From the NCBI GenBank assembly GCA_965655095.1, contig OZ296648.1, forward strand, positions 104,718,001 through 104,782,000: a DNA stretch of 64,000 nucleotides, read 5' to 3'. Positions 7,601 through 64,000 of this stretch are shown in pieces (within the stretch, counting starts at the first letter, position 1; the number at the start of each line of letters is the position of its first letter). Position numbers and translations under genes: made by a program. The DNA is from Haplodiscus bocki. Taxonomy: Eukaryota. The notes beneath the pieces were generated by a model that had not been told where the DNA came from, searched no databases, and saw nothing but the letters and a program-made list of their open reading frames with translations.

Positions 7601-8049
7601 GGTAAAACAGCAAACCATCTTTTCTAATTGGTCTGTGCTAGAATGCAAAAAAAATTAAATCTCACAAAAATATTAGATTTTCAAAACAATTTATTTTACA
7701 ATACTCGACTTTCGTTCAAGACAGAGAGCATCGTTTTCGAAAACATGTCAACGTATCTGACTTCTGTAGACTGTGGTCACTCTTTGAATCTAGTAACTCT
7801 GGATAGGCGTACCAGTGTTTGCCGAAATTGTCTTCGGATTTCATATGTGAGTTGTGAACAGGCAAAAATGGATTGCAAGAAAGACTTCATAAACTTTGTT
7901 CAAGCAAGAACTGAGGCAATTTCAAAAATCTCAACCGAAATTACTCTCACTACACACGGCAATGTGAGACAGATTCAAAATTAGCGCTATAAGATTAAGC
8001 TGGAATGAAAAATGGCAAAAAAATATGTGAATCTACTGGACAAAACAAA

Positions 8050-34638: not shown

Positions 34639-34646
34639 TCTCTCTT

Positions 34647-34719
<73 letters not shown>
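34639..34719. repeat. (CT)n/(GA)n microsatellite, ~80 bp
   Basis: Visible tctctctc run with a few interruptions; it produces the spurious ERER/SLSL ORFs. Confidence 0.97.
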
Positions 34720-39099: not shown

Positions 39100-39540
39100 T
39101 CAAAGAAAGACAATCTTGTTTGAGCAGAAGGTGCGGATTCCGAGCATCATAACGATGATAGGCCTTGTTTGTTTCATGTAAATTCCTTCCAATCTCAAGA
39201 GGATCGAAATATCAGATTTTGAATCGAAGACTGAAGCATTTTCCTCTGTGAGTTTATGCTCAAAAAGTCGAAAATTACAGTTGTCAGGCGTTTTACTGAT
39301 CCCTTGATCTTTCAAGGCGCGTTGATAGGTGTCCAATACTTTGTTGGAAGAAGGTACTAGCACATGCTGGACACATTAGGGCATAAACGACTCAACTTCT
39401 AGGAAAAGTAGGGTTCATGGTCTTGAGATAGTAAAGTTTGTTTCTAGTTTTTGGGGGAGAGGAATAAAATGCAGAGCCTTGTAGTTGCTTGTCCTTTTTT
39501 CTATGAAATCTTGCTCAACATTCTTCCTGTTTTCGACAAA
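39100..39540 (-). pseudogene. Penelope-like element GIY-YIG endonuclease remnant (3' part of the split PLE ORF)
   Basis: Minus strand: FVENRKNV...QKLET.. KLYYLKTMNPTFPRS*VVYALMCPACASTFFQQSIGHLSTRLE, then KTP..LTEENASVFDS..LLRLEGIYMKQTRPII. This matches the PLE VVY-x3-C-x2-C-x3-YVGQT-x-R-x-L-x2-R and LE-x3-I-x4-P-x-(L/I)N pattern. Confidence 0.8.
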
Positions 39541-42500
39541 AGTAGAAGAAGAGTGAGAAAAGGTGACGATGGGGGGAGGGGGGGTGGAAGACTTTATGTA
39601 TCAAGATAGGTTAGAGCAAGCCGAATGGAGCCGAGAGCCAGGAAGGGTCTTCAAACATAGCCGTGAGCTCTCGGGTGACGTACTGCTCAATTCACTTTGG
39701 TTGATCAGAAGTCTTTACAGAAACACTTGGCCTTCGTTTAGTGCTTTTGAACTCTTGGTTGAATCTAATACTTCCTTCCTGTGGATCCAAAAATTGTCCT
39801 TTCGCTGCATATACGCTCGCATTGAACCTGAATTTGAAGACGTTCCGGAAAAAAAGGCACAAACCGATACTTCAACTGAACAATATTCACATTCTGATGC
39901 AATACTTTCAGGCTATGTCTTGCAATAAGTAGTATATGATAGCAAGGGCCAGATAGACTTTTGTTGCATGGGTTACAGGGCGATTTCAAAAGTAAATTAA
40001 ATTTTTTTCATAGTGTTCTAGCGGAACGATCGAAAAAAATTCTTCCTAAATTGAGATGAAAAAAGGCATTGTTTGTAGCATAAAAGCAGCCGCTTTTACT
40101 GTAAAGCTGTCTACTCAATTCATTCTCAATCATTATTTGACTTGATTGAAGTACAAGCAAACAACCTAATTCATACATGTAATTATATGGACACAAAAAT
40201 CAGACCATTACCATAACAAAAAGTTGCGTTGACCAATCACTTTGCAAAATTTTTAGTGACCTGGTTTGTGCCTATCAAAGTTGAAAAACATTTCCGTGAG
40301 TGCCTGGCATCGAGAATCTACAATCCAGATGCAGTGACAAAGGCGTGCATTAACCTTATAGTTAGTTGTTGTTTGAAATGTTTGCAATAAACAAGTGAGA
40401 AAAACTTCTTCAAAATAAAGATAATTACTGAACCAACCTGCACCACACAACAAAGAGATTACTGCAAAATGTGTTGTTTCAGGTCAAAAAAAACAAAGTC
40501 CGGACACTGAACGGAAACTACAAAGACTACTGAGTAAACTACTATGGTGAAAAGAACTTGAAGGGCGCTTTTTCAATTTCTTATTTGCAAGAAAACAATT
40601 TTCAGCTCTCAAGAGTTTTTAAATGTTCAAAAGCACCTGGTTTTTGTCAACAAAACGTGCAGTCAAGTTTTTCCGGTCGTTTGAGAAAACTAAAGGAAAG
40701 AGGACAGGTGAGACTGGGAAATTGTTAAGAAAAGTATACACAGTTTAATGAAGCATCCGTGTTGAGCTTCTCTTCATATGTCGTTCAAAAAACTTCTTCT
40801 AGTTTCTGTTCCGTATTTGTCACAAGTATATCTTTCCTTGTGACTGAGTTTGGTCTTTTCACTAATCCTTGTTTGACAAACTAACCTGAGATAAGTTATT
40901 GTTATGTAATGTAACCAAGTGAACAGTAACAATGCGAGAATAATAGTGACGGTTTCAAAGTGGCAAAATACTGTGTTGATGCTGTCACTATACATGGAAA
41001 AACCCAACACGCAGGAATTGTTTCAAGCTTAACTAGATAAGGAAGCATTACTTAGTAGTAATTCCATAAAAGGAAAGTCTGGTTCTCAAAAGTTAAACAA
41101 AATCTGTTAAAGTCAAATAATTCTTTCGTCAATGTCACCGGCGGCAAGAAGCGATAACATTTTAACTATCTCAATCTAATATTCTTGTACTGGTGATATT
41201 CTGTCCAACAAAAACAACCAAATGAAACACTGATCCTCAGATGAAGCGACAGACTGTCTGTGAAAGACAAGCAAGTGGCAGAATTTCCCCTGGTTAGGAG
41301 ACACGTTTTCTAGAAGAATTAGCCAATTGAATCAAATTGACCTAATAAGGAGACACCATTTGTGAGAAACATTTTTTTTCCACTACGTATTTTGTCTTTT
41401 CAACTCTCAATTAAAATGTCTTCCGTGGAAAGAAGAATAAATGCGTGTAAAGCTGAACAATTTGTCTGGATGTCGAAGACTTTCGATGACAGACCCATAG
41501 ATTTATCGACGTAAACTAATGCCTTACACCAACATAACGAACTTACCGAGCCCAATAAAGTTTTCAACCAGTACACCAATTTTCAATATATAAATGTATA
41601 CACTATACGAATCAAGTTTTATACTAATGCACAGCCTGATCTTCGAAAAAGAAATAAATCAAAATCCGAAAAATTTTGTAATTTATAATTCAAAATCAAC
41701 TGTTTTTAGAGAAAAACAAAAATACAAAATGTGTCGAACCAGAACGTGATTTTTTAAACGGAAAATTTTTTGAAACGCTGACAACTTTCAAAAGTTTGAT
41801 TTCAAAATCTGACGCATTGTGACAGTTTTATTTCAAAGTATGACGCGTCTTGAGAAAATCGATTCGAAATCTGACTTGCTGTATAATTTTCACTTCAAAA
41901 TTTAACACGTCATAAAAAAATGAATTCAAAATCAGGCGCGTTGTAAAGTTTTTATTTCAACATCGGATACGTTGTAAAATCATTGGATCAAAAAGTGACA
42001 AGTTGTAAAAAATTTTATAAAAGTTTCTGAGTTGTTTTGAAATTTCGGATTCAAAATGTGACTTTTTACTTTTTTTTCGGGTTCTCACCGATAGATAACT
42101 TCTGTTACAGAGTTTCGATAACTTTGGCAAAGAAGAGTTTTTGAGAAACGTTTGTAGTTTTTCGAGTACCAGATGAGAACCGCTCGTAAAAGAATAGCAA
42201 CCGTCTGATTGTTGAAGACACTTTCTGAACAAATGGCTCTAAGCAAGGTACGCAATCAGTGGCGAAAGTTTTCACTAAAACTTGCCTACGATGTAAGTCA
42301 GCGCTCAATTTTGTCGAAATTGAGTAACTTTTCCTTTTTGAATGAAGCGATACACTTCTACAATACAACCCAAACTTCTACTTTTGATCCTACAAAGCTT
42401 GCAAGTTTTTCTAATTTGCGCCCAAGTTTACTTCCATATTGAATTTGCCGTCTTATGTTCGAGAAAGCGTTTCCTTCAACAACAAGGTCTTTTCGAAAGA

Positions 42501-43979
42501 TTAAGAGAACACTCTGATTTATGTTGATTTTGAGTGTGGCAAAAGTTTCTACCCTGAAGCTCCGAAAAGTGGGACAATTCAACAATCGAAAACGGAAGAA
42601 CGTTTCCAGATGCTGTAGAAAAACGAGGTGCATCCAAAATAACTACCAAGGGAAATGTTCTAGTGATAAGCAGAACTCCTCTAAAATGTTTCTCAACCAG
42701 TATAATTCTTGAAAAATGGAAACAGCTGCTGTTGTCTCATTCAAACACAATACTGACTGGGACTGTTTGTCCAATCCTTATTCTGAAAAAAAACCAGTCA
42801 ACAGCCTAGAACAGACTTAAATTCTTTGTTCTCTTCATTGCGCCGGATAGACAGTAAAAAGAGCGGATTGCGCCTCAATTTTGCTTCCTTTTCAAAAAAC
42901 TAACCAGACGGACCAGTAAACGAAACAATTGCTACGGTTGATGAGTTGAGTGATATTTTCGGAAGCCCGCAGCAAGGAGTGGAGTTCCACCGTTTGTGAA
43001 GAACGGTGGCTGGATTTAACAGTAGCTCTCTGTTTAAGGTCTTTGACTTCTCTTGATTACAGGCTCAAAGTTTATGAAGTGTTTTGAAAATTTGGATTTC
43101 TTGTTCGTTTTCTCTGAAGATTTTGAGTCGGAATTAAAACTTCGTCAAGAAGAACTACAAAGTAACACTCCCATAAGCCGCCAAAACCACAATGCATGAG
43201 CTCACCCTACCAAAATACCTAAGTAAACAAACTTCTCAGCCTCCACTCTCTATAACCTAGTTCAAATTTTGAACAAGTTGACTCTTTGTTGTTTCATAAT
43301 ACAAAACAATATCATAAAAGAGTCTTTGAAACCAAACTACCTATATTTGTACATTCCAAACCCTATGGTCTTTAGTAAGACATTTCTTGAAAACCATTCG
43401 CTGTCTAAGTATATTGATGAACACACTTGGATTGGATTGCTTGTCCTAAAAGAGACTAATACATTGATCACCGTTTGGAGACTCGAATTTTATCCGAACA
43501 CTTTGATTTCATCAACAAAAGAAACACACATCGTACACTAAATCAAAAATGAAACGTCCCCTATTCAAAATATTGGATAATGAAGTAACGAATTGCAAAA
43601 AAAGGTCAGATCAAAATCTGACGCTCCTCAAAAACCTCAATTCAACTTCCAAAACGTAAAAAAATTCCTCCGAGATGTGTTTTTGAGTTCTATTCTCGGA
43701 CTCTAAGTCAATGATCATACCAGTTGTCATTGATAACACCAATTTGTTGGGAGGATGTATTTCAAAAAACAATAAATCAAGGTCTGTTTTAGATTTTGTC
43801 GCCAATTGTACCTCCAAAAGCTGCCAATCGTCAATTCGCTCCTCAATCTGCGGATAAAAACGTTATTACAGCACACAATTTTCAAAAAGGCTATAGACAG
43901 AACTCTGTGGATCCTAAGAAGGAGCAGATCATCAGTTTTTCCAATTATAGACAATTGTAAAAGCAAAGGAAGACGCGCT
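39541..43979 (+). repeat. Left arm of the large inverted repeat
   Basis: Reverse-complement matches to the right arm throughout: 40,070-40,170 vs 48,715-48,820; 40,790-40,940 vs 47,945-48,100; 42,730-42,900 vs 45,770-45,940; 43,260-43,500 vs 45,180-45,420; 43,741-43,930 vs 44,746-44,935. Confidence 0.95.
41780..42060 (+). repeat. Degenerate ~31-bp minisatellite (approximate consensus ttcaaaatctgacgcgttgtaaaatttttga), ~8-9 units
   Basis: Successive units: ttcaaaatctgacgcattgtg, ttcaaagtatgacgcgtcttg, ttcgaaatctgacttgctgt, ttcaaaatttaacacgtcat, ttcaaaatcaggcgcgttgt, ttcaacatcggatacgttgt. Confidence 0.75.
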
Positions 43980-45989
43980 TGAGCAATGTTATAAAATCGG
44001 AAAAAACCAGCAAGTTATTAGATGAAGTTGTTCTTGAACATTGGGTTAGGATTGGTAATAGCTCGGCATTGTAAGAAAGTAGGGTTTCCTTGGGCAAATT
44101 TTTGAAATAGGGTACCTCTCAACACTTTAAAAAAACAAGGTGTACCTCAGCAAAGTATTAAGACAGCGTGTAAGACACCACAAGGTAAAAAGACAGAGTT
44201 TACTTAGGCAGTGTAACACTGTATGGTGTAGATACGGGTGTCGGCGTCATTAATCTGACATAACATTAAGATTTCTGTGAAAACCGAGCGCATCAGACCG
44301 TCAGTGTATTAAGATGTGCAGTCCGAGCTGATTTTGTTCGATAACGTAATTTGATAGCTTTTAGAGCCGGTCTGTGCATACAATGAAAATTGGTGGAGTA
44401 GTCAAGAAGCTGAGAAGTTGCAGGCTTATGTTTTAAGTACGTTTCAATTCTGCAACTTTTGAATACAAACTATAGGCGCGGGAATTTTTGGGACACCTGA
44501 GGTATGTTTCGAGCCACACATGTCTTGAGTTTCGATTTTCCATCAAGCACTGCCAGTTTTGATTGTTGTCAAGATTGTGGTAGGAAATGTCTCTCACCCA
44601 GTTTCAGGTAGATTCTGTGTAGGTGTCAGCTTCTTTCCATCGCTTTTTCTGCTTGCTCACACGAAACGAGGAAAAAATGGACGGAATTTCATCTGCAGTG
44701 CGTCTTCTTTTGATTTTACAGTTGTCTTTATTGAGAAACACTATTGATCTGCTCCTTTCTAGGATCCACAGAATTCTGTCTATAGCCTTTTCGAAAATTG
44801 TGTGTTGTAAAAACGTTTTTACTCGCAGATTGAGGAGCGAATTGACAATTGGCAGCTTTCGGAGGTACAATTGGCAACTAAATCTAGAACAGACCTTGTT
44901 TTATTGTTTCTTGAAAATTATCATCCCAACAAATTAGTGTTAACGTTGACAGCTGGTATGATCATTGACTCAGAACCCGAGAATAGAACTCAAAAACAGA
45001 TCTCGGAGAAAATTTTTTAGGTGTTGTAAGTTGAATTGAAGTGTTTGCGGAGCGTCAGATTTTGAGCTGACTTTTTCTTGCACTTTGCTACTCCATTATC
45101 CAATATTTTGAATAGGGGACGTTTCATTGTTCAGTGTACGATGTGGGTTCTTTTGTTGATGAAATCAAAGTGTTTGAATAAAATTCGAGTCTCCAAACAG
45201 TGATCAACGTAATAGTAGCTTTCGGGACAAGCAATCCAATCCGAGTGTGTTCATCATTATACTGAGACAGCGAATGGTTTTCAACAATGTCTTACTAAAG
45301 ACCATAGGGTTTGGAATTTACAATTATAGGTAGTTTGGTTTCAAAGACTCTTTTATGATTTTGTTTTGTATTATGAAACAACAAAGAGCCAACTTGTTCA
45401 ATTTTTGAACTAGGTTATAGAGAATGGAGGCTCAGAAGGGTGTTTACTTAGGTGTTTTGTTGGGGTGAGCGTGTGCAATGTGGTTTCGGCTGCTTATGGG
45501 AAAATTATTTTATGGTTATTCTTGATGAAGTTCTGAATCCGGCTCAAAATCTTCAGAGAAAACGAACAAAAAATGCAAATTCTCAAGACACTTCTTAAAT
45601 TTTGAGCCTGCAAACAAAGGAAATTAAAAAACTAGATCAAAGAGCAACACTTAAATTGAACTACAGTTCATCACAAACGGTGAATCTCCACTTAGTCCTC
45701 TGGCCTTCCAAAAAGACCCACTCAACTCACCAACGGTAGCAACTGTATCATTTACTCGGCCGTCCGGTTAGTAAGTTTTTTGAAAGAAAGCAAAACTGAC
45801 GCGCAATCCGTTCTTTTTACTGTCTTTCCGGCGCAATGAAGAGAACAAAGAAAATCAGTCTGTTCTACGCTGTTGACTTGTTTTTCGAGGATAGTGATTG
45901 GACAAAGAGTGTCGGTATTGTGTTTGAATGACATAACAGCTGCCGGTTCTATGTTTCATGATCTGTACGGTTTGAGAAAGAGATTAGAG

Positions 45990-46796
45990 GTTTGATGCTC
46001 ATCAAAACAACATTTATTTTGACAGTTACTTTGGATGCATCTGGATTTCTCACAGAATTTGGAATTTTTCTTCCGTTCCCTCTTGATGAACTGTCCGACC
46101 CTTCTAGGAACTTCAGGTTAGAAAGTATTACCACAGTCAAAATTTACATAAGTCAAGAAGTTCTGCCCTCAATGACAAAGACCCTGTCAATGAAAGAATC
46201 TGTCTCCAGGTACTTATGAGCCAAAAATGTTTTAAATTAAACCTCTGGGTGCAAAACAAAATAAAATGCAAGCTATGTAGGAGCAGAAACAAATTGTTGG
46301 GTCCTGTTATAGTTATACATCACTTCATGCAAAAAGGACAAATTAATCAATTTCGACAAAGTTGAGTAGTGATTTCTGATCGTAGTGAAGCATTGGTGAG
46401 AACTTTTACCATTGGTCAGGTAAGTTGGCATCTGGAAGAAGCAAGTTACTTTTGTTGAAAACATATTTTAAAGAGTGCGTTTTCAGGGTAACAAGATACT
46501 CATTTTCTACGGTTTTAACCAATTCATACCTACTTTATAAGAATAACTTTCATTTTGGTCAGAGTCATAGCAAATTCCTTATATGGAAAGTGTTTACTTT
46601 TTGGGGTCTTAGTGCATGTTTCAAAACTGTTTTGTCTTTTAAAGTTATTTGCTCAGAACTGCCATTCAACAATCAGACGGTTGCTGTTTTTTTTACAAGC
46701 GGTTACCATTTGTTACGCGAAAAACCAATGAAGTTTTTCTATAAATCTGTTCTGTGCAACCTTTCGAACTTCTGCAACAGCTATATCTGGCAGTGA
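45990..46796 (+). pseudogene. Decayed Polinton accessory gene (QSDGC-motif family, function unknown), right-arm copy; mirrored on the minus strand at ~42.1-42.7 kb
   Basis: aacaatcagacggttgctg at ~46,668 matches the reverse complement at ~42,196-42,214 (ORF 41957: KCLQQSDGCYSFTS) and aacaatcagacggctgctg at ~61,258 (ORF 61164: NFFKQSDGCCYVAS). Confidence 0.55.
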
Positions 46797-46819
46797 GAAC
46801 CCGAAAATCCAATTTGAAA

Positions 46820-47105
46820 ATCACTTTTTGAATCTCAAAAATGGAAACACGTCTGAAGTTAGTATAAAAGTTTCACAACGTGTGACTTTTTGCATCAAAA
46901 CTTCACAACGTATACGATTTTGTTTTAGGAAATTTACAACTCGCCAGACTTTGAATTCACTTTTTTACGACGCTTTAAAGTTTGAAGTGAAAACTTTACA
47001 ACGAATCAGCTTTCGTTTAATTTTTTCAAGACGTGTCATACTTTGAAAGAAAAATTTCACAAGGCCTCAGATTTTGAAAAAAACTTTTGAAACTTGTCAG
47101 CGTTC
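46820..47105 (-). repeat. Mirror copy of the ~31-bp minisatellite in the right arm
   Basis: Units acaacgtgtgactttttg, acaacgtatacgattttg, acaactcgccagactttg, acaacgaatcagctttcg and acaaggcctcagattttg are reverse complements of the 41.8-42.06 kb units. Confidence 0.75.
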
Positions 47106-49181
47106 AAAAAAATTTTCCGTTCAAAAAGTCATATTTTGGTTCGATATGTTTAGCTTTTTTTGTTTTTTTTTCAAAAAAAGCTTGATTTTGATTTTTAAAT
47201 GACAAAACTTGTTGAATTTTGATTTTTTTTCGAAGATCAGACTGTGCCTTAGTATATTACTTGATTTGTATAGTCTATACAATTATACATGAAAAAACAG
47301 TGGTGTACTAGTTAAAATTTCATTAGGCTGGGTAGCTTCTTTATGTTGGTGTAAGTCGTTAGTTTACGTGGGTTTGTGATCTATGGGTCTGTGAATCCAT
47401 AGGTCTGTGATCGTAAGCTTTCGACATCTGGTATAAATGTTCAGTTTTACACGCAATTTTTTTTTTCATGGAGGACTTATTGATTGAGAAATGAAAAGAA
47501 AAGAAACTTGGTGAAAAAAATAGTTTTCTCGCAAAAAGTGTCTCTTTATCGATTAAATTTCTTTCAATTGGCTATTTATTCCAGACAACTTGACTCCTAA
47601 CCAGGGGAAATTGTGCCCTTTGCTTGTCTTTCGCAGACAGTCTGTGGGCTGATCTGAGGATCTTTGTTTCACCGGATTGTTTTTGTTGGACAAATAATCA
47701 CCAGTAGAAGAAGAATAGTTTGAGATGGTTAGATTTTTCTCGCTTCTTGCCGTTGGTATCACGACGAAAGAATTGATTGATTTTAACAGAGTTTTTTAAA
47801 TTTTCAGAACCAGACTTTCTCTTCAGGGATTTATTACTAAGTAATGCTTCCTCATATGGTATTGCTCAAAACATTTCCTGCTTGTGGGTACCTTTCATGT
47901 ATAGTAACAGCATTCAAACAGTCTTTTGACTCCCTAATTTTCAATATTCTTCTTGCATTGTTACTGTTCACTTGGTTACACTACTTATCATTATTTTTTC
48001 TCAGGTTATTTTGTCAAACAAGGATTAGTGAAAAGACCAGTCTCAATCGCAACGAAAAATTGATTTTTGACAAATATAGAACAGAAACTAGAAGAGATTT
48101 TTTTGGTTAGCATAGGAAGAGTTGCTCAACTGCGACGCTTCATCGTATTCATTGTCCCATTCTCTCAATAACATCACAGACTCACCTCTCTCTACGTCTT
48201 TAGTTTTCTCGAATGACTGTTGAATTTTGACAGCAGTTTTTGTTGAAACAGTGAGGCTCATTTGAACAAATAGCTCGTTCTGAGAGCTTGGAATTGTTTT
48301 TTTTCAAGTAACAAAATAGCAAGCAGCCTTCAAGCACTTTCCAAACCAGTACTTTATTGAATAGCTTTTGTAGCTTCTATTGACTGTCCGGACACTGGTA
48401 TTTTGCCCAGCGAGAACACATTTTGTGTTATTTTCAAGTTGTGTGATTGAAGCTGATCCAGGGAATGTCTGTATACGAAAAAAGTTTTTTTCACTAGTTT
48501 TTTGCAAGTTATTCAAATAACAATTATCTAAAACGTTAATCCACGCTTTTGTCGCTGCATCTTGATTATTTCTCGATGTCAGCCACCTACGGAAATGATT
48601 TAGAAGTTTGAGAGTCTTAAATCAGGTTGCTAAAAGTTTTGCAAATTGATTGTCAACGGAATTTCTTCCTATGGTAATGGTCTGAACTTTGTGTCCATAT
48701 GAGTATATTTATGTTTTAGGTTGTTTGCTTGTACTTCAATCAGGTCAAATACTGACTGAAAATTAATTGAGTAGACAGCTTTACAGTAAAAGCGGCTGCT
48801 TTTTTGCTACAAACGATGCCCACTTCCTTCTCTTTTTAGAAAGATTTTTTTTTTCGTTCATTCCGCGAGAACACTATGCGAAACAATTATTTACTTTTAT
48901 AAATGCCTTGTAACCCAAACAACAAAAAACTCTTCCTCATCTGGCCCATGCTACCATATAAAACTTATTGCAAAAGATTGCCGGAAAAGGCGTTTGACAA
49001 ACTGAACGACCTTCAGTTCAAGTTTCAGTTTGTGGTTTTTTTTCTGGAACGTGTTCAAGTTCAGATTCAGTGGGAGCGTATGTGCAACGAAAGGACAACT
49101 TTGGTTATACTGGACAAAGTTTTTAAATTCAGCCAACACTTCAACCTAATTGAACGACTGCCAAGTGTTTCTATAGAGACT

Positions 49182-51000
49182 ATTGAGAGATTAATTAAAG
49201 CAACAGCTAACTTCAACTTCAGGGAATACAAATCTTGAGAAGGCTAAAGCGACAGAGTTGCTGAAAGGCATTGTAATTATCAATAAAAGTGAGCAACAGA
49301 TTGATTCCTTGAGATCAATAAATGCTCTGGGGTTTGGTAATTTTGAAGCTTACTTTGTTTCTTTGATAATTAAAATTTCGATTGAGCTACATTTAACGGG
49401 CTAAAATTGCGCAATTGAGTCTGAGCAGTTAATGGGGAGAGCTTGACTTGATATCAGATGTTTAATTCTTTCTTTAGTTTATCAGTCAAGAGATGGGTGC
49501 TTCACAGTGTCAGTCTCTTTTCATGCCTACTTCTGTTGGTTTTTGACACTGTCTTGAATCCGCCGCGGGCGGGAACATGCGTAATACATAATTTCACATC
49601 ACCAATCAGTACGGAAGTAAGCAACGGTCCTTTTCGATTTCACGTCTTCTGCCTCAACTTTTCTCCTAGTTTCTTCTCCGAAACTTCCAGAACATTTGAA
49701 GTTCAAACCAAGAACAGACAAACGACACATGATATCGTATTTGGCTAGAAACATGCATCAAACTAGAAAGTTGAAAAACTTGTCTTTATACTTTCTGAAT
49801 TTCAAACCATGACTCCGCTATCAAATTTTTTGTCAAGTTGCCGGGCCTCAAATTTCGCGGGAAGCCTGATATCATACTTTTCCTGTCAATTTTTACAAAA
49901 CTTCAGGGGTAAGTTGAGTATTGCAGACTCCGTTGCTGAATGTTGCTCATTGAATTTCTTTTTTGTAAAACTGGCGGCTCTTCGTCGCAGGAGTACTGCT
50001 TGTTTGTGAAGCTGTAATCATGAACTATCTTCTTGCAGTCTCTCAATTAGAAGCTACTGAACACTTGTCCCAAAACCAATTCACCTGACAAATTAAAGAA
50101 GCAATACCAATAAAAAAATTGAGCAATTCTGGAAAAATGTCAACTACTTGTCACAAACGTCTGACTGTACGATTGAGATGTGTATTATTCAACCTGTCTA
50201 TTTCGCTCATCAAAGAAATTTTTCAGCCCAATATACTTTGAAGTTGAATTTGGCAAGTGATGTCTTTGCTTGTTTATTGCGATTACAGAGAACGGGAAAA
50301 ATAGGGTTCGGACGATGAACGATGTCTTTTTTACTTCAAAAACTCTAACATTATCTCAACTTAAGTTGCTGTAGTACACAAAATTTGTCAAAGAAACTTC
50401 AACTTGATACATTGATTGAACTATAATATCTTTTTACATTATCGAACGTCCTTGTTTTCCATAGGACATTTGCAGTACTTTAAAACATTGACGGAATCGA
50501 AAACGACGCTGAAAACCGAAATTTTTTTCAAAATCTGATAAGGAAACATTGCAGAAATGTAATAGCAATAAAAATGAGTATCCGCAGGCAAAACAATTAA
50601 TTGCAGATGCAGAAAATTATCTGCAGGCGTACTGAACTATCCGCGAGCGTAAATGACTATTCTCACGGGCGGTGGCCAGCAACAGTTGATCCAGAAGCTT
50701 TCTTAGAAAAAAACCATTTCCTCGTAGAAACAGTAGTCTGACAGTGCCGAAAAAACCACAGTTTTTATTGCGTTGCAAATCTTTAGAACTTAATCTACAA
50801 CATTTACGAATACCATTTCCTATATGGAAACATTATTGAAAATCTTTCCTTACCTTACTATATTGCCGATTTATGCCCTATGTTAAAACTTTGACAAACT
50901 CCACGCTATCTTAAAACCTTGATAAACCATGCCCTCTTTTTTTACAATGCTTAGCTGTACCCTACATTAAGAGAATGCCGAAAGAGTGTCCGTGCGGAAA
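49182..51000. other. ~1.8-kb segment present only in the right arm (probable secondary insertion; possibly a LINE ORF1-like remnant on the minus strand)
   Basis: Arm homology stops after ccaagtgtttctatagagact (49,161-49,181) and resumes at aaacttcgtaaaccaacc (51,001). A weak minus-strand DRKSMISGFP near 49,870 resembles R-x-x-N-I-I-I-x-G-L-P. Confidence 0.55.
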
Positions 51001-51168
51001 AAACTTCGTAAACCAACCAGAATCAAGTTTTACGTCATCCGAGACCTCTCAGTTACGCTTGAATACACGTTTCGAATGTCGGTTCTACTCAACTTTTGCC
51101 TATCGTACTACGTAATATTGTTCAACCGCCCCCCCCCCACCGTCAGCTCTGCTCACTCTTCCGCAGCT

Positions 51169-52480
51169 GACAGGCTTTGTGCCGGAAATTCCTGGTCTGT
51201 GCGGTCCATCTTTGATTATATATTTTTTTTTGAACAGGTGATGATTTTATTCAAAGTAGCATTAGTGACGAGTTCGATGAGATGTTTTTGCAAATTGGTT
51301 GTTTGTGAGAATCGTGTGGGCCACAATGAAAAGAATACAGAACAGTTTTCTATCGCAACAGATTTTAAAGATCCTGCGTAGCATATCAGCTCCTAATGAC
51401 CTTCTGTTGAGATCGAGATTCGAATCATGAAACATGAGCGGGACGCCAGCGTCGACATTTTTCCTGAATGACTGTGAGAATAACATTCCATCATCAAGTT
51501 TTTGGAGTTCCATATCGAGGAACAAAGTAATGAAGTGATTTTCCGGTTTTGTTAAGTGAGTTTCAGGTGTTCATGCGTTGTGTTGACAAAGTCAAGTAAA
51601 CCAATCTCAACACCAAGTTGTAGGGTTCTGATAACATTGTATCGTAAAAAAATTCCTGAACCTTCCCAATTCAGAATCATATTTCGATACAAAATTTGTT
51701 GCGCGTGGCGAACCAAATGAACTGCCCCCAAGCAACGCCGTCACTCTGCTTGAAGTATCCTTGATAGGTTAGCTTGATTAAGTCTTTCACAATCGTTTTG
51801 AGAAAGACTTTGAAAGTAGACTAGCTAACACAGATAGGTGCATGACAAGTGGTAAAAACGACTCAACTGGGTAACAAATGCTAAAGTAGAAGGGGACTTC
51901 TCTTAACTCTCATATCTAAACTCAACATCTACTTCTTTGCCTAGAGACGATATTGGGTTGGTCTTGAGGGCATCCTTCCAGTCGGACATGATATTGGCCT
52001 AAGACAGTTGTTTCAGGATACCAGAAGGAGAGACGGAGAGACTTTCGTTTTGTGAGTCAGCAATTGGGAATACTGTCATTGTCGGAAAATTTTTTCGATG
52101 TGAATACACCAGAACATAAAACCTTACAGCCTGTGATTCTACTGGATGGACTGTCTTGTACAGCTTTTCGGAGAATAATCCATTTCTTTGCATGTCTAAC
52201 AACTTCTTCCAAAACTTCGTTTCTTTTTACATATTGAAGTCAGCAGAGGCCTCGGTTTTTTCCAAACTGTGGATCGTTGAAAAACTTGTCCATTTCTTTG
52301 TTCTCTTTCTTCATGAGGATAAAACGGGTTCCAATGTTGTACGGTAGGGCTAGTGTTTCTTTGCATTTCAGGCTTTCTGCAGTTTTTGATCTTTTGTGGC
52401 TGTCTTTGTCCTTTGCAATGTTCAAGATAGCCTTCAGTGAGTGCAGTTATTTTGATTGTTACCTCCACCGGAGCTTCTCT
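51169..52480 (-). pseudogene. Penelope-like element reverse transcriptase remnant (5' part of the split PLE ORF)
   Basis: Minus strand: LPYNIGTRFILMKK (PxDKG), LYKTVHPVESQAVRFYVL..H (P-x-GS-x-P-x-R-x-YGLPKxHK), YFKQSDGVA/GSSFGSPRATNFVSKYD (Y-x-Q-x-x-G-x-AMGS-x-L-x-P-x-LANIF, ~51,685-51,760), FLRYNVIRT (RYVDD site decayed), FLDMEL..FRKNVDAG..H..RRSL..MLRRIFKICC..ILTNNQF, TLNKII. Confidence 0.88.
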
Positions 52481-52489
52481 AGTGTTAGT

Positions 52490-53030
52490 TTGTGTGCTGT
52501 GCAAGAGTGAGTCTTTGTGTGTTTGTGCATTTTCTTCGGTTGTGCTTCCTTGTTCTGTTTTTTATCCTTTCGTGACAGTTTAAAAATTGTGTTTATATGC
52601 TTTTTTGTGAGATTGTGCCCGTGTACAATTGTCTGCTGGTGCTTGTGTCTGTGAGTGATTTTGTGTGTATGTGTGTGTGTTTGTTTTTGAGACTTTTTGT
52701 TTTTTATTATCCGCTAGTGTGTGTGCTTGCCTTTGCGTTTGTGTGTGTGTGTGTGCGTGTGTTTCTGTCTTTTTGTTTGTTCGTTAATGTATTTTTATGT
52801 TTCTTTTTGGTTGGATAAGGATTGTGCTTTTTGTGATCTTATGAGAGAGATAGAGTGAGAAGTTAGTGTAGGCGTTTTTGTGTAAGTCTGTTTTCCTCCG
52901 TGTGTGTGTTTCTTCGTCTGCATGTAATTCTGCGTGTGTGTCTTAAAGCATGTTGTTTTTGTGTTCATGCGTTTGTGTGTTTGCCTGTGTTTTTGAGTAT
53001 TAGAGAGATGATTTGATAAAGTGACTGAGA
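52490..53030. repeat. (GT)-rich low-complexity / degenerate microsatellite tract
   Basis: Many gtgtgt runs in a T/G-skewed tract; source of the spurious V/C/F/L-rich ORF 52597-52818. Confidence 0.85.
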
Positions 53031-53664
53031 GATTGGAGACCCTATGTTTTAGGATAAATTACACTGAGCCCAAAGGAGTCAAGCGCCGAGAAGTTATTTC
53101 AACTGTTAGTTGGAGCCTTCGGGATACGTATTATTTGAACCTGATTGATTGACAAATTTTTACAGGTTGAATTAGCGGCCAAATCCTCAATGTAATAAAA
53201 AAGAGCGGCCTTGCGTTGGTTTTGGCTAAATTTCGTCAAAATAAAACATAGCGCGACAAGGTGTTACGCAGGCTATAATTCGGTATTGCATTACAACAGG
53301 GTACACATGGGCAATGTTTTAGAATAGGGTGACAATTTTTCACGATTGGGTGCACCTTATAAAGATAAAAACATAGGATATTTTTTGGTTTCGATTAATG
53401 GGGATATACACGATACCGCTAAGTTAACGGCGGATCAGATGAATAGCTGATTGAAACTCTAAAATCTCAACCGAATGCGGATTTGAACCTGAACGGACGG
53501 CGTGCGGAGAAGTTTTACGGCTTGTACAAAATTTAATGCCTGCCGATAGTGTTGTGATTCAATGGTATGTAAAAAGCTCAATTCATAGTTTACCATAAAG
53601 TTTTTAGAGAATAGGAATATCAACAAAACCTCGTCTATTTCGCAAAGTTATATTGTGAAAAAAC

Positions 53665-54055
53665 ATCATGTTGAGTTACTTTTAAACCGAAGGAAGTGCA
53701 ATAACATCGTTGATTCTATTTTTTTCTATCACGAACTTAAAGATTTGAAATGCTGCAAAAACCATGTACAAACAACAAACGCTATGATGGGACTTTACTG
53801 GCTCTGCCTTTATCTGCCGGTAGTGTTTCTGGAGGATAGTGTACGTTCACGTCCATGATGACCAGCAAAATACAATGTGTGACAAGCGTTTGGTATATTT
53901 ATCCAATGCTAACCCTGATTAGATCTGGGTTGCATTTCTATGCGAGCAAAAGTCTCAAAGAAACATTTGTAACAAATTCTGGAGGAAATGAACAGAAGTA
54001 CCGAGACTTCGGTAGAAAGATACAATAGAATAATTGCTGGAGAACCAATTTATCC
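53665..54055 (-). pseudogene. Polinton adenain-like (C5/Ulp1-fold) cysteine protease remnant
   Basis: Minus strand: RYFCSFPPEFV (G-x-F-P-x-D), QPRSNQG*HWI (GEHW catalytic His), TLYFAGHHGR (YFDSxG), EPVKSHHSVCCLY (Q-x5-CG catalytic Cys). Confidence 0.8.
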
Positions 54056-60299: not shown

Positions 60300-61360
60300 A
60301 CAATATTATTACGTCCTTTTTTGATTCTTGATTGACAAAGAGGTTTCGATCATTTCAAAAAAACCAACTCATTCTCTTTCAAACAGTGAAAAAAAAGGTC
60401 AAGAGTGAAAAGGTACACATACTTCAACAAGTCCTTACAAATGCGTTGTTTTGCATTGACTTCATCACAAACAAAATGTTTTTCTGTGGGAGTTTTTGTG
60501 AAGACATCATATTAATTTTTCACATTGACGAATCAATGGGTTTTCTATTCTTTTTATGTTTCTCGTAATTATTCGGACTTGAGCATTCGAACTCTCTGGT
60601 TTGTCCACTTTTCACCACAGCAGAGTCCCTCAAGTTTTTCTGTTTAGACGATCCAAATTGTCAACTACTTTCTTAGCCAATTGAGTTGTTCATCCAATTA
60701 TCTTGACGAAGTTAGCATCTGCAATGGAGACAAAATTTGTTTTCTGCTGAAACTTCTCCTGAAGGAAGTAGCTGACTTTCTAATAGCATAAAATGATTGA
60801 AGTCTGCCAACCCTTTATGAGACTTTGTACAATCGAATGTCTCTGTTATCATCTCTTTGAAAGGACTCGAGTTAAATATCCAAAACAAAGGAGTCATTTA
60901 TAGACCGGCAAATTTATTCAAGTCTGTCATTGCTTTTCAAAATTCCAATTAGTCTAAAAAAGCATTAGTATTGTGAGCCACGGGTTCTTGTTGTTCAGAG
61001 ATCAAACTGGTTATTTAAGAAAATGTCTTTTATCCCTTGAAACTCAAACAACGGAAGCTGCAAATTGTGGCTTATAGACGCTCCTGTAATTTCTATTTGG
61101 TCACCATCACGCGAAAGTCCTTCAAAAAGATGTTCTTTTTCTAAGATCAAGGAAAGTAGATAATTGCATCAAAGGAACTTCTTCCCTTTTATAGTTTGCT
61201 TGTGCAAAAAACGTGATATTTTGTTGTTCAGAAGCGTTTATGCACCAAATTTCTTCAAACAATCAGACGGCTGCTGTTATGTTGCAAGCTTTTCACGGAT
61301 CTTACACAGAAATTCGGAAAAGAGTGTGTTTAATTCTGCAAACAGACGCAAAAGTGCAAA
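60300..61360 (+). pseudogene. Polinton accessory gene remnant (QSDGC-motif family)
   Basis: ORF 61164 RNFFPFIVCLCKK..FFKQSDGCCYVASFSRILH aligns by eye with ORF 46425 (WKVFTFWG.., FFTSGYHLL) and ORF 41957 (QQSDGCYSFTSGSHLV). The 5' boundary is a guess. Confidence 0.5.
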
Positions 61361-64000
61361 AGGCACTTCAAACACGATGAGATTTCCGTTGCCAGACACA
61401 ATCAAAATATGTGCATTCTGCCCAGCCTCAGATATCACAATTTACTCAAGGAAGACATTGAAAATTTACCTCAAAACTTGGACTTTTTTATCACGTACCA
61501 ACAAATGGACAATCTATATACACTCTTTAAGTATCGGTCCACTGACGAAGAGTTGCAAAGACGACCAAAGGTTTGGTACTGCGCACAAAAACAGTTTACG
61601 CAAACAAAATCACATAGGAGTGCAGAGACTGTCTATATCGCAAAAAAAATGATTAAACTGGCTCCCGTCGGAAAAAATTATCCCAAATTGATGGAAACTC
61701 GTGGAATGTTGCAAACTCAGGTTGTTTTTGTAGTAGCTTTTTTTTAGAACAGAGAGTGTCTTTTATATCAGATCTGTACAACAAGGTGTTCTTGACGTTA
61801 GCAACAGAAAAACTTTTTCACCGGGAACCTGAAAAAAATTGGAAAACAGAGTCTGACTCAAAAAAATTACAACACAGCAGTTTATGAAGTCATTAGAATC
61901 TGAAAACGGCAGAAGTTTGAAAAAACCCGATTTTCAAGAAACATGTTTTGGAAAATCCTATTCCGTAAGATTTTCAAAGTTTTCGGACTTTCTGCTAAAT
62001 TAAGAGCACAGTTTTGAAACAAAGTTTTTGAGAAAAAAAAACAAAACTTTTACAACGTTTTCGGTTGTTGCAAGGTAATTTTCCTGAATTTTAGAGCTAA
62101 TTTTTGACCCAGTTCTTCGACACAAAGTTTTGTTTGACAACGTTTTCATCCATACCATCATGATCAGTATATGGCATACGATGTGTCCGTCAAATGAATT
62201 ATAGCAGTCACCTTTCAGGGAATAGTTCATGTATTTGTTTTCACGAGGAATGTGTCTTTTAAATTCGCGGTGTCGCCCAGAGTTTTTCATTACAACAATT
62301 TCTAGGTATGCAAAAACCAGCTGTTACCACTAAGATTAAGGATTAGGAAACTAGAATTACTCTGTTTCTCTTGTTTGTGTGTTGTTCTTGGAAAACTTTT
62401 ATGATTAAACGTAGCATACTCAGTATGTGTTTTGCTGAAATCACATACACAAAAATACAAAACGATCTGTTGAAACAACTTAGCATAGTCATACTGAAAA
62501 ACATTTCCCTTTCGGGTTCTGAAGGGTCGACTTCTCAGCAACCTGGAATGTTCATTTCGTTGCTCAGATCCTGGGGCAGATGTTGGCGGAAATTCAATAA
62601 CTTCCATATCAGACACCTGAAACCGCTTCTATCCACCTCTTGCGCGCAAACACTTGCCTCAATAGTCTGCAAAGTTCCTGGCTGGTTCTCCGTTCTTCGA
62701 AGCTGCGCTAAATGATCGTCAAAAACTGTAAAATCTTCTAAAGTGGCAAGTTCAACGCAGCAACGGGAAGTTTTGCCGAGCTGATTGTCATTGGTTAGTC
62801 AAGATCTTTCACGTTCAAAATTACAGACTTTTGCCCAAAATCAAAAAACCCGTGGAAACCAGCAATAGAGACTGCGAAAAATGTGCTGTTTTTCATTGAA
62901 CTGAATTTATGTGAAAAGAGACATGAAAAAAAACATTTGGTTAATTGTATCAGCCAATGAAAGCTCAACACGACTATGCTATAAATGCATGAATGGAAAT
63001 ATTTTCGCTATTTTCGTCCGGGTGTTCCTGATTGTGTTCGGCGGAGATTCTTTTGTAGCGAGCGGATGCTTTGTTTGCGTCGCAGTCACGATTCTACTTT
63101 TGGCAAAAAAAGTTTTTCCATCAACACCACAATCTGTAATTGTTGATCGCTAGAATTAACTTTCAAAAAGTGACACCCTTTGCGCTGGGGACCTCTATAA
63201 CAACTTTAATGTTTTTCATCCACGTTTGGACATGGCTAAAAAATATCTTTCAGATCGACCAACAAATCCAATAACGTCTATAATTATCTTTTGTCCCTCT
63301 TGATAAATATGAACCCCTTGTCACTCATCAAGAGGAACAAATACGCATCAATTTCAAAGAGATAACTGCGCCCCTGGCTTGCGGACGCTAACACTTGACA
63401 TTGACAATCACATCTGCCGATTGGTTTGAAATTTTTTTCCACGCAAAGTTTGCTGGAACGCACTCTCTTTGGACAACAGACGTTAACAAAAACAATAGTA
63501 ATGCTCCCTTCAAGACAACAATCAATGTCGTTTGTGCCACACATTGAAAATTCTTTCAAAAAATTTACTTTTGTGCAACGTAACGTTGGTTTTTTGAATG
63601 TAGTAAGCTTCGCGACAGTTAAGCATGACAAATTCCAAATGTATGAGTAGATAACTATGTTTTTCAAACTTTTTGGGAGGAAGAAATGCAGGTTTTGTTA
63701 TTTTGGAAAGGGGAAACTGAACAAGTTTCTCTGATGGAACGTTCAATAGTAATGAACAAAGACTTTGTCTTTTTGTTTTGACGATCCGCTTTCAATTTTG
63801 GATGTCGGTAGTGCAGTCTGTGGAAAGTTGATTGCTGGACCAAATATTTCAGAAAGTCGAGCAATTCTTGATCAACAAACAAAGTTTTCTTGGAACTTTC
63901 ATTCCTTCTTGCAAGTTAAACTGCTGTGCTGTTGTGTCCTCAAATCGAAAAAGTTGGACAAATTTTCGTGGAAATTTTTCATTGGAGTCTTGGCTGACTC

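What the first reader, a model, noticed from the sequence alone, without database searches (positions are those of the whole stretch)
39541..51168. 11.6-kb giant foldback element with Polinton-type ends: candidate copy-back (snap-back) defective Polinton
Seen: about 4.4 kb at each side is one long inverted repeat around a ~717-bp unique spacer (43,980-44,696). The termini align as AG...CT, the flanks are a 4/6-matching 6-mer (gacaaa / gacagg), and the arms contain a homologue of a gene in the neighbouring Polinton. I found no pPolB, integrase, ATPase or capsid inside. Known: Polintons have 5'-AG...CT-3' ends, 6-bp TSDs, TIRs typically of a few hundred bp, and are proposed to replicate by protein-primed strand displacement through panhandle intermediates. 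Inference: a template switch duplicated one Polinton end into a hairpin genome keeping both origins/integrase sites, and it was then integrated in trans. That would be a fossil defective-interfering particle or a non-autonomous foldback Polinton class, which I do not know to be described at this size.
Basis: partly seen in the sequence, partly recalled or inferred. Interest (0 to 1): 0.88.

Follow-up and report, generated by a model that had tools for sequence, protein, structure and literature searches.

The report
Decayed giant foldback transposon copy
This 11.6-kb stretch is an old, worn copy of a gene-less, mirror-image ("foldback") jumping-DNA family present in many copies in what is probably a stony-coral genome; its ends and 6-bp insertion footprint look like those of Polinton/Maverick virus-like elements, so it may be a parasite of such elements, but it is not a one-off defective virus genome.

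Summary
Window 39,541-51,168 is one element with inverted arms (77-79% identical), the stated termini, and flanks gacaaa/gacagg. The element belongs to a repeated family. I fetched copies from 7 other contigs of the same ENA metagenome assembly and fragments from two JGI coral metagenomes. Nine termini align from the same first base (five start AG), and flanks are unrelated. A young complete copy (L010:311-14545, 14.2 kb, arms 96% alike) has a perfect 6-bp target-site duplication. In the papers read, 6-bp duplications with 5'-AG ends fit Polinton/Maverick; other 6-bp families end TA..TA or TG..CA. No copy shows any coding signal or Polinton gene. No neighbouring Polinton exists in the window, and the claimed shared gene is not supported. 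The mirror layout, about 6-7 kb per arm around a homologous centre, is the family norm. The window's arms are unequal and its spacer looks unique because its left arm lacks about 1.8 kb, 210 bp and its inner end. Arrays of a 28-bp motif sit in mirrored clusters, and patchy arm identity points to arm-to-arm gene conversion. Best reading: a non-autonomous foldback transposon family with Polinton-type ends. Its mobiliser was not found.

The parts
39535..39540 (.). left copy of the decayed 6-bp target-site duplication (gacaaa)
   Evidence: matches the right flank at 4 of 6 positions. A 6-bp duplication is perfect in the young relative L010.
39541..51168 (.). whole element: old copy of a non-coding palindromic (foldback-type) transposon family
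   Evidence: Homology to copies on 7 other contigs stops at these two bases.
39541..39709 (+). left terminal domain (starts AG; G-run; one surviving 28-bp motif site at 39,596; conserved ~42-bp block)
39541..43979 (+). left arm (4.4 kb), shortened relative to the right arm and to other copies
41797..41960 (.). 62-bp tandem repeat, 2.6 copies, inside the left arm
   Evidence: Homologous repeats occur in other copies.
43980..44163 (.). remnant of the central sub-repeat arrays (decayed 28/56-bp units)
   Evidence: Matches the central arrays of L003, L004, L006 and L007.
   Evidence: the stretch 44,140-44,980 occurs in both orientations in L003, L004 and L007. 72% identity to coral-metagenome contig L025.
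44697..51168 (-). right arm (6.5 kb), the more complete arm
   Evidence: Collinear with the arms of L003-L008 and L010.
46428..46637 (.). 210-bp stretch present in the right arm and in other copies, absent from the left arm
   Evidence: alignments to L003, L005 and L006 run through it.
49188..51001 (.). ~1.8-kb outer-arm stretch present in the right arm only within this copy, but in both arms of L005; includes one subterminal repeat unit at c. 50,848-50,983
51004..51168 (-). right terminal domain (reverse complement starts AG)
51169..51174 (.). right copy of the decayed 6-bp target-site duplication (gacagg)

Best explanation
Window 39,541-51,168 is an old, eroded insertion of a non-coding, non-autonomous DNA transposon family whose normal form is a giant palindrome. 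SHOWN: two arms of about 6-7 kb mirror each other around a short centre that is homologous between copies. The ends are defined and usually start 5'-AG. Insertion duplicates 6 bp of target. Homology between copies stops at the termini. No copy has coding signal. Each arm carries three mirrored clusters of a 28-bp motif (terminal, mid-arm, inner). The two arms of one copy are each other's closest relatives, with patches of near-identity. The family occurs on many contigs of one eukaryote, probably a stony coral or an associate, and in Cyphastrea coral metagenomes. INFERRED: the element is moved in trans by an enzyme that makes 6-bp staggered cuts and recognises the AG-type ends. The most likely candidate is a retroviral-type integrase of a Polinton/Maverick-like element of the host (about 50% likely, given the family reading). 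The 28-bp arrays are its reiterated binding sites, or those of a partner protein. Arm similarity is maintained at least partly by arm-to-arm gene conversion after insertion. The window copy then lost about 1.8 kb, 210 bp and the inner end of its left arm, and nearly all motif sites.
For: Inverted arms and termini. Family: the deep protein search with window:46389-46793 gave 18 relatives, which lie on other contigs of ENA assembly ERZ26859043. Both arms, the spacer and the 1.8-kb stretch are homologous to L003-L008 and L010 at 65-75%. Nine termini align from one base, five starting AG, with unrelated flanks. Perfect 6-bp duplication AAGATC/AAGATC around L010:311-14545; 4 of 6 in the window. Arms of one copy are nearest neighbours: 95.6%, 94.8% and 78.7%, against a mean of 72% between loci. 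Patchy identity in all six palindromic copies. No coding: codon-position counts flat, indels not in threes, frames interrupted in other copies; no Pfam or PDB match. Motif arrays: 35 sites of a natural 20-mer in L010, all inside the element, 0.07 expected; 11-30 in other copies; none in control loci. Coral relatives: L025 and L022. Literature: 6-bp duplication plus 5'-AG ends is the Polinton/Maverick signature; IS3EU/GingerRoot end TA..TA and Ginger/LTR elements TG..CA (PMC10045372, PMC6839031).
Against: No Polinton gene or any other transposase was seen in the window or in about 190 kb of fetched sequence from the same assembly, so the mobiliser is unknown. Only two copies with both ends were available, so the 6-bp duplication rests on one perfect and one 4-of-6 case. 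Four of nine termini do not start AG (two GG, one AA, one unclear). Arms of 6-7 kb are far beyond the few hundred bp usual for Polinton TIRs and the ~2 kb reported in butterflies (10.1101/2025.02.07.637071). A 6-bp duplication also occurs in IS3EU/GingerRoot. The internal motif clusters could instead mean a compound origin.
Confidence: 0.72

Rival explanations
1. One reading: a single copy-back (snap-back) event during protein-primed replication duplicated one end of a Polinton into a hairpin genome, which was integrated once, leaving a fossil defective genome at this locus.
For: Mirror layout, AG ends, 6-bp-type flanks and absence of genes. Copy-back defective genomes are known for protein-primed adenoviruses (my own knowledge, not checked here).
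Against: The same layout, with homologous arms, centre and ends, recurs in at least 7 other loci and in another coral's metagenome. The arms contain no Polinton-derived or other coding sequence, even in a copy with 96% identical arms. There is no neighbouring Polinton and no shared gene. A weaker form, that the founder of the whole family arose this way, is not excluded; I put it at about 0.1.
Confidence: 0.04
2. A foldback-type non-autonomous element of a cut-and-paste superfamily that also makes 6-bp duplications (IS3EU/GingerRoot-like or an undescribed DDE transposase), unrelated to Polintons.
For: 6-bp duplication. Modular TIRs with internal tandem repeats and a non-coding middle, like classic foldback elements (PMC4079207). 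No Polinton found nearby. GingerRoot relatives are reported in corals and sea anemones (PMC6839031 abstract).
Against: IS3EU/GingerRoot termini are TA..TA, occasionally TG..CA (PMC10045372). Here five of nine termini start AG and none starts TA or TG. Classic foldback families have 7-10-bp duplications (PMC4079207).
Confidence: 0.2
3. Not mobile: an inverted segmental duplication (local palindrome) formed next to a satellite array, or two independent head-to-head insertions of one repeat.
For: It lies 5 kb from a 34-kb satellite in gene-poor DNA. The arms are only 77-79% alike.
Against: Nine termini share one end point and unrelated flanks. A perfect 6-bp duplication flanks the whole palindrome in L010. 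The two arms of each copy are sister sequences. The centre is homologous between loci.
Confidence: 0.02
4. Assembly artefact: a foldback chimera of long reads.
For: One related contig (L006) starts exactly at a palindrome centre, showing that assemblers struggle there.
Against: Artefactual foldbacks give near-identical arms. Here the arms differ by 21-23% and by several indels, and independent contigs show the same design.
Confidence: 0.01

Closest known systems
Polinton/Maverick elements (self-synthesising, virus-like transposons)
   Same: 6-bp target-site duplication and 5'-AG-type termini (PMC10045372, PMC6839031). Terminal inverted repeats. Cnidarians are listed among Polinton hosts (my own knowledge of Kapitonov and Jurka 2006, not re-read here).
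   Different: No polymerase, integrase, protease, ATPase or capsid gene, and no coding signal at all. Arms of 6-7 kb make up almost the whole element, instead of TIRs of some hundred bp. Arrays of a 28-bp motif. No sequence link to an autonomous Polinton was shown.
Polintons with ~2-kb gene-bearing TIRs in Pieris/Euchloe butterflies (bioRxiv 10.1101/2025.02.07.637071)
   Same: Multi-kb inverted terminal repeats in integrated elements with Polinton-type insertion.
   Different: Those TIRs carry hexon and adenain genes and flank a full gene set. Here the arms are non-coding and nothing lies between them but about 1 kb of repeats.
Classic foldback transposons: FB, Galileo, Tetris (PMC4079207, PMC4168063)
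   Same: Non-autonomous. Long modular TIRs with internal tandem repeats, a variable non-coding middle, many rearranged copies, and repeats that seed tandem arrays. Compare L008, where an inner arm segment is amplified about four times.
   Different: Duplications of 8-10 bp in Tetris (PMC4079207), and 7 bp for Galileo and 9 bp for FB by my recollection; here 6 bp. Arms here are mostly unique sequence of about 6 kb rather than mainly tandem repeats. Ends start AG.
IS3EU / GingerRoot (integrase-related cut-and-paste transposons)
   Same: 6-bp target-site duplication; present in corals and sea anemones (PMC6839031, PMC10045372).
   Different: Their termini are TA..TA, occasionally TG..CA, and their TIRs 100-150 bp. 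Here AG-type ends and 6-7-kb arms.
Snap-back (copy-back) defective genomes of protein-primed linear viruses such as adenovirus incomplete particles (my own knowledge; no paper read here)
   Same: A long inverted duplication of one genome end that keeps two identical termini.
   Different: Those are sporadic replication by-products with variable junctions. This is a heritable, multi-copy genomic family with a conserved centre and no viral sequence.

Membership tests
Polinton/Maverick (autonomous element) | [quoted passage not shown] | tested here: not met
   No such Pfam family in 144 open frames (>=60 aa) of window 34.4-64 kb, nor in the open frames of the best-preserved copy L010.
Polinton/Maverick (autonomous element) | retroviral-type (rve) integrase gene | tested here: not met
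   Same scans. Called genes of L003-L010 have no Pfam family on record.
Polinton/Maverick (autonomous element) | morphogenetic module (capsid proteins, packaging ATPase, adenain-like protease) | tested here: not met
   No match in Pfam or PDB sequence searches. Pfam may lack models for divergent capsid proteins, but the flat codon-position counts argue against any coding.
Polinton/Maverick (ends) | 6-bp target-site duplication | tested here: met
   L010: AAGATC on both sides of 311-14545. Window: 4 of 6. Only two complete copies were available.
Polinton/Maverick (ends) | 5'-AG termini | tested here: met
   Five of nine aligned termini start AG, two GG, one AA, one unclear. Criterion from PMC6839031.
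Non-autonomous derivative of a Polinton | terminal sequence shared with an autonomous Polinton of the same genome | not testable with these tools
   The assembly cannot be scanned by DNA. Nothing was found in IMG/VR.
Non-autonomous derivative of a Polinton | internal sequence derived from a Polinton | tested here: not met
   No coding remnant in any copy.
Foldback-type transposons (structural class) | very long modular TIRs with internal tandem repeats, and a short non-coding middle | tested here: met
Foldback-type transposons (FB/Tetris/Galileo lineages) | 7-10-bp target-site duplication | tested here: not met
   6 bp here. Tetris has 8-10 bp (PMC4079207).
IS3EU/GingerRoot | 6-bp duplication with TA..TA (rarely TG..CA) termini | tested here: not met
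   Duplication length fits, but no terminus starts TA or TG (PMC10045372).
One-off copy-back defective genome | unique junction; both arms copies of one end of a parental genome | tested here: not met
   The same layout and a homologous centre occur in at least 7 other loci. A parental genome was not found, so that half is untestable.

The most novel reading that the evidence does not exclude
A non-coding 'satellite' of Polinton-like elements in a coral: a 12-14-kb palindrome that keeps only the integrase recognition ends and dozens of reiterated protein-binding sites. It would be copied and inserted by a helper Polinton's machinery, with the mirror design regenerated or favoured by protein-primed, panhandle-type replication. 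That would be a heritable counterpart of defective-interfering genomes for this class of virus-like elements.
Probability: 0.15. Interest if true: 0.8.

Novelty: new variant of a known kind. Interest (0 to 1): 0.55.

Why it matters
Non-autonomous foldback transposons are well known, and so are Polintons. A gene-less family of giant palindromes that combines foldback design with the Polinton-type insertion signature (6-bp duplication, AG ends) was not described in any paper I could find. If a Polinton-like integrase does move it, the family would show that these virus-like elements have their own genomic parasites. It would also offer a natural catalogue of the end sequences and reiterated sites that the machinery recognises. 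The copies further illustrate three general processes: arm-to-arm gene conversion in large palindromes, transposon segments turning into tandem arrays, and non-coding repeats entering public protein collections as spurious proteins. For the window itself the finding is modest: one old, eroded copy.

Tried and rejected
1. Coding content. Pfam scans of all 144 stop-to-stop frames >=60 aa of 34.4-64 kb, of L010 frames and of four relatives gave nothing significant; nothing in PDB. The best hit, DUF3915 at 1.5e-4, falls in open frames near the TC dinucleotide repeat at the satellite edge (34,639-34,719) and is probably low complexity; I did not check it further.
2. Mirrored open frames as a dead gene. 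Only one of three pairs aligns, and codon-position counts are flat within the window and across copies.
3. Non-standard genetic code. No code opens long frames; the public gene caller evidently read TGA through on these contigs.
4. Shared gene with the flank at 61.2 kb: E = 0.04-5.
5. The ~1.8-kb right-arm stretch as a nested insertion with its own TIR and duplication. Rejected, because L005 has it in both arms.
6. L006 as a lone half-element. Rejected: the contig starts at the palindrome centre.
7. Each arm as a complete smaller element, making the palindrome a head-to-head dimer. The internal modules lack the outermost ~40 nt of true ends, so this is not supported but stays open.
8. A conserved terminal hairpin: z-scores -1.3 to +1.2 in four of five termini.
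9. Rfam and tRNA scans were empty.
10. The terminal block was not found in JGI metagenomes or IMG/VR; the motif was not found in IMG/VR.
11. Exact look-ups of two window ORFs were not on record; the terminal ORF has no relatives.
12. The satellite and the window flanks are unrelated to the family.
Full report
OBSERVATION. The window has three parts. Bases 1-34,392 are a tandem satellite with a period of about 1,376 bp and a higher order of about 2,750 bp, 87-92% identical between units. The remaining 30 kb is gene-poor: only four ORFs of 150 aa or more in the whole window, no tRNA and no Rfam family. Within it, 39,710-43,979 pairs in inverted orientation with 49,181-44,697 at 76-81% identity, E = 0. 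The outermost ~170 bp, 39,541-39,709, pair with 51,168-51,004. Both ends start AG, and the flanks read gacaaa and gacagg. Global arm identity is 77-79%, with transitions about equal to transversions. This is an old structure, not a recent event and not an assembly foldback.

NO GENES, NO NEIGHBOURING POLINTON. I scanned all 144 stop-to-stop open frames of at least 60 aa between 34.4 and 64 kb against Pfam, each on its own. None matched a polymerase, integrase, ATPase, protease or capsid family, or anything else significant. tblastx between the arms scores alike in all six frames. Substitutions between the arms fall evenly on the three codon positions of every open frame. The 'homologue of a gene in the neighbouring Polinton' comes down to a 66-nt, 73% DNA match near 61.2 kb and blastp E-values of 0.04 to 5. 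I found no Polinton anywhere in the window.

THE TURN: IT IS A FAMILY. A profile-free search of 1.84 billion proteins with the longest open frame of the right arm (46,389-46,793) returned 18 relatives at 37-52% identity. Eight of them were traced to their contigs; P0015 and P0024 lie on one contig, and all seven contigs belong to ENA metagenome assembly ERZ26859043, as does the window. The remaining hits also come from ENA. These 'proteins' are artefacts: the public gene caller read TGA through on these gene-poor contigs. They nevertheless led to DNA. Each fetched locus is homologous, at 65-75%, to the window's arms in both orientations, to its 'unique' spacer, to its terminal domain and to the ~1.8-kb stretch of the right arm. 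Nothing outside 39,541-51,168 has a match in any locus.

ENDS AND TARGET DUPLICATION. Nine termini align from the same first base: both of the window, both of L010, and one each of L003, L004, L005, L006 and L008. Upstream of that base the flanks are unrelated. Five termini start AG, two GG, one AA and one is unclear. L010 holds a complete young copy, 311-14,545 (14.2 kb, arms 96% alike), flanked by a perfect 6-bp direct repeat, AAGATC. The window's 4-of-6 match is what such a duplication looks like after the amount of decay its arms show. According to the papers read, 6-bp duplications are rare among eukaryotic transposons. They occur in Polinton/Maverick (ends 5'-AG), in IS3EU/GingerRoot (ends TA..TA, rarely TG..CA), and in some Ginger2 and LTR elements (TG..CA) (PMC10045372, PMC6839031, PMC2836005). 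The family's ends fit the Polinton signature best.

ANATOMY OF THE FAMILY. The normal form is a palindrome of about 12-14 kb: two arms of roughly 6-7 kb around a centre of about 1 kb. A 28-bp motif is reiterated in arrays just inside each terminus (24 units in L006), at mid-arm in the opposite orientation, and as 56-bp double units on both sides of the centre. All clusters are mirrored between the arms. A natural 20-mer of this motif (L010:359-378), allowing four mismatches, occurs 35 times in L010. All 35 lie inside the element, against 0.07 expected by chance. Other copies hold 11-30 sites, two satellite-only control loci hold none, and the window holds one, at 39,596. A block of about 42 bp, found 115-160 nt from the true ends, recurs beside the internal clusters. 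The centres of L003, L004, L005, L006 and L007 are homologous, and L006 begins with a 184-bp, 91% palindrome. In L003, L004 and L007 the stretch equal to window 44,140-44,980 is present in both orientations. The ancestor was therefore a more complete palindrome than the window copy. The window's left arm lacks three things that its right arm and other copies have: about 1.8 kb, 210 bp, and its inner end with part of the centre. Other copies are rearranged in their own ways. L008 has an inner arm segment amplified about four times with a period near 3.2 kb, L003 has a 3,086-bp tandem duplication, and L004 and L005 have truncated left ends.

NO CODING IN ANY COPY. The best-preserved copy has open frames of at most 217 aa, without Pfam or PDB matches. 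Across copies these frames show flat codon-position counts and indels mostly not in multiples of three, and they are interrupted several times in every other copy. The family is non-coding and hence non-autonomous.

HOW THE ARMS RELATE. Over a segment shared by 11 arm copies, the two arms of one element are always nearest neighbours: L003 95.6%, L007 94.8%, window 78.7%. The tandem units of L008 are 90-94% alike. Different loci average 72%, range 67-83%. Along the arms, identity is patchy in all six palindromic copies: 500-bp windows of 97-100% sit in backgrounds of 76-95%. Such patches are the mark of arm-to-arm gene conversion after insertion. Arm identity is therefore not a clean clock, and the higher identity near the window's centre needs no special explanation. 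Whether the arms are also made identical at each round of copying cannot be decided from these data.

HOST AND DISTRIBUTION. The contigs carry a coverage tag (20-63x) and come from one metagenome assembly. GC content is 36-38%. A reticulocalbin-like, intronless 321-aa gene lies on a contig that shares the satellite, with a 98% identical copy on the window's own contig. Its closest named relatives are fish reticulocalbins at about 30-36% identity. A scan of JGI metagenomes found two true relatives. L025 covers about 1 kb of the element's centre at 74%, and the window's spacer at 72%. L022 covers the subterminal arrays at 75%. L025 comes from sample Ga0126343, which a preprint names as a Cyphastrea sp. 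2 coral metagenome (10.1101/391565). The host is thus probably a stony coral or an organism living in one. This is an inference, not a determination.

MECHANISM. Shown: a discrete, multi-copy, non-coding palindromic element that inserts with a 6-bp duplication at varied sites. Inferred: it is moved in trans by an enzyme making 6-bp staggered cuts at AG-type ends. The most likely candidate is the integrase of a Polinton/Maverick-like element, about even odds, with an IS3EU/GingerRoot-like or unknown transposase as the main rival. The 28-bp arrays are likely reiterated binding sites, by analogy with Galileo and other foldback elements (PMC4079207). As an account of this locus it fails.

COMPARISON AND NOVELTY. 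In structure this is a foldback transposon, like FB, Galileo and Tetris, but with a 6-bp duplication, AG ends and mostly unique 6-kb arms. By its insertion signature it resembles a Polinton but lacks every defining gene, so I do not file it as a Polinton. Polintons with ~2-kb gene-bearing TIRs are reported (10.1101/2025.02.07.637071). I found no description of a gene-less foldback family with Polinton-type ends. Repbase could not be searched. I rate it a new variant of a known kind.

LIMITS AND DISCLOSURES. Only two copies with both ends were available.

Slip: I derived the 20-nt degenerate pattern used from the repeat units that Tandem Repeats Finder printed. On noticing this I stopped using the pattern and repeated the count with a natural 20-mer read from L010. 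The loci found were verified with natural sequence by blastn.

For coordinate mapping I also wrote a file to /scratch that joins L009 and L010. These are two overlapping fetches of one public contig with an identical 14,566-bp overlap, and nothing was altered. Later work used L010 alone.

Noticed in passing
window 1-34392; also L001:12059-20345 and L002:9172-13254: A 34.4-kb tandem satellite with a period of about 1,376 bp (higher order about 2,750 bp), 87-92% identical between units. It has a recurring 195-aa ORF without known domains. Further arrays at 86-88% identity lie on the window's contig and on a 482-kb contig. It is unrelated to the foldback family.
   Followed up: partly
L008:1-11728; L003:4362-8548: An inner arm segment of the family is tandemly amplified about four times (period near 3.2 kb) in L008 and duplicated (3,086 bp) in L003. 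This is a transposon segment on its way to becoming a tandem array, as described for the foldback element Tetris.
   Followed up: partly
P0006-P0026 and the called genes of L002-L008: Public protein collections hold 'proteins' that are translations of this non-coding repeat. The gene caller appears to have read TGA through on these gene-poor eukaryotic contigs (the tool reports 'translates_to_query: no').
   Followed up: partly
L001:5101-6066 (minus strand); 98% copy P0027 on the window's contig: An intronless 321-aa reticulocalbin-like (multi-EF-hand) gene, the only convincing gene seen near these repeats. Its closest named relatives are fish reticulocalbins at about 30-36% identity.
   Followed up: partly
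L006:1-189: The contig starts about 97 bp before the symmetry centre of a palindromic copy (184-bp palindrome, 91%). This suggests the assembler broke at the palindrome.
   Followed up: no
window 52001-54000: Strong strand asymmetry (GC skew +0.20, AT skew -0.19) in the right flank of the element. No ORF or domain explains it.
   Followed up: no
window 61164-61649: The longest open frame outside the satellite (162 aa). No Pfam match, and the sequence looks like junk.
   Followed up: partly
L004:1-1875 and 2-577 / 2425-3002: A further partial copy of the family abuts the left arm of the L004 element in inverted order, giving a second, different palindromic junction.
   Followed up: no
window 34639-34719: A (TC)n dinucleotide repeat of about 40 units at the edge of the satellite array. 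It is the likely source of the weak DUF3915 Pfam hit.
   Followed up: no
L013, L017, L018, L020, L023, L026, L028-L030 (project JAAUXW01): Many single exact motif hits fall in one sequencing project. Only L017 and L029 show short further similarity (37-70 bp) to the element; the rest may be chance or very distant relatives.
   Followed up: partly
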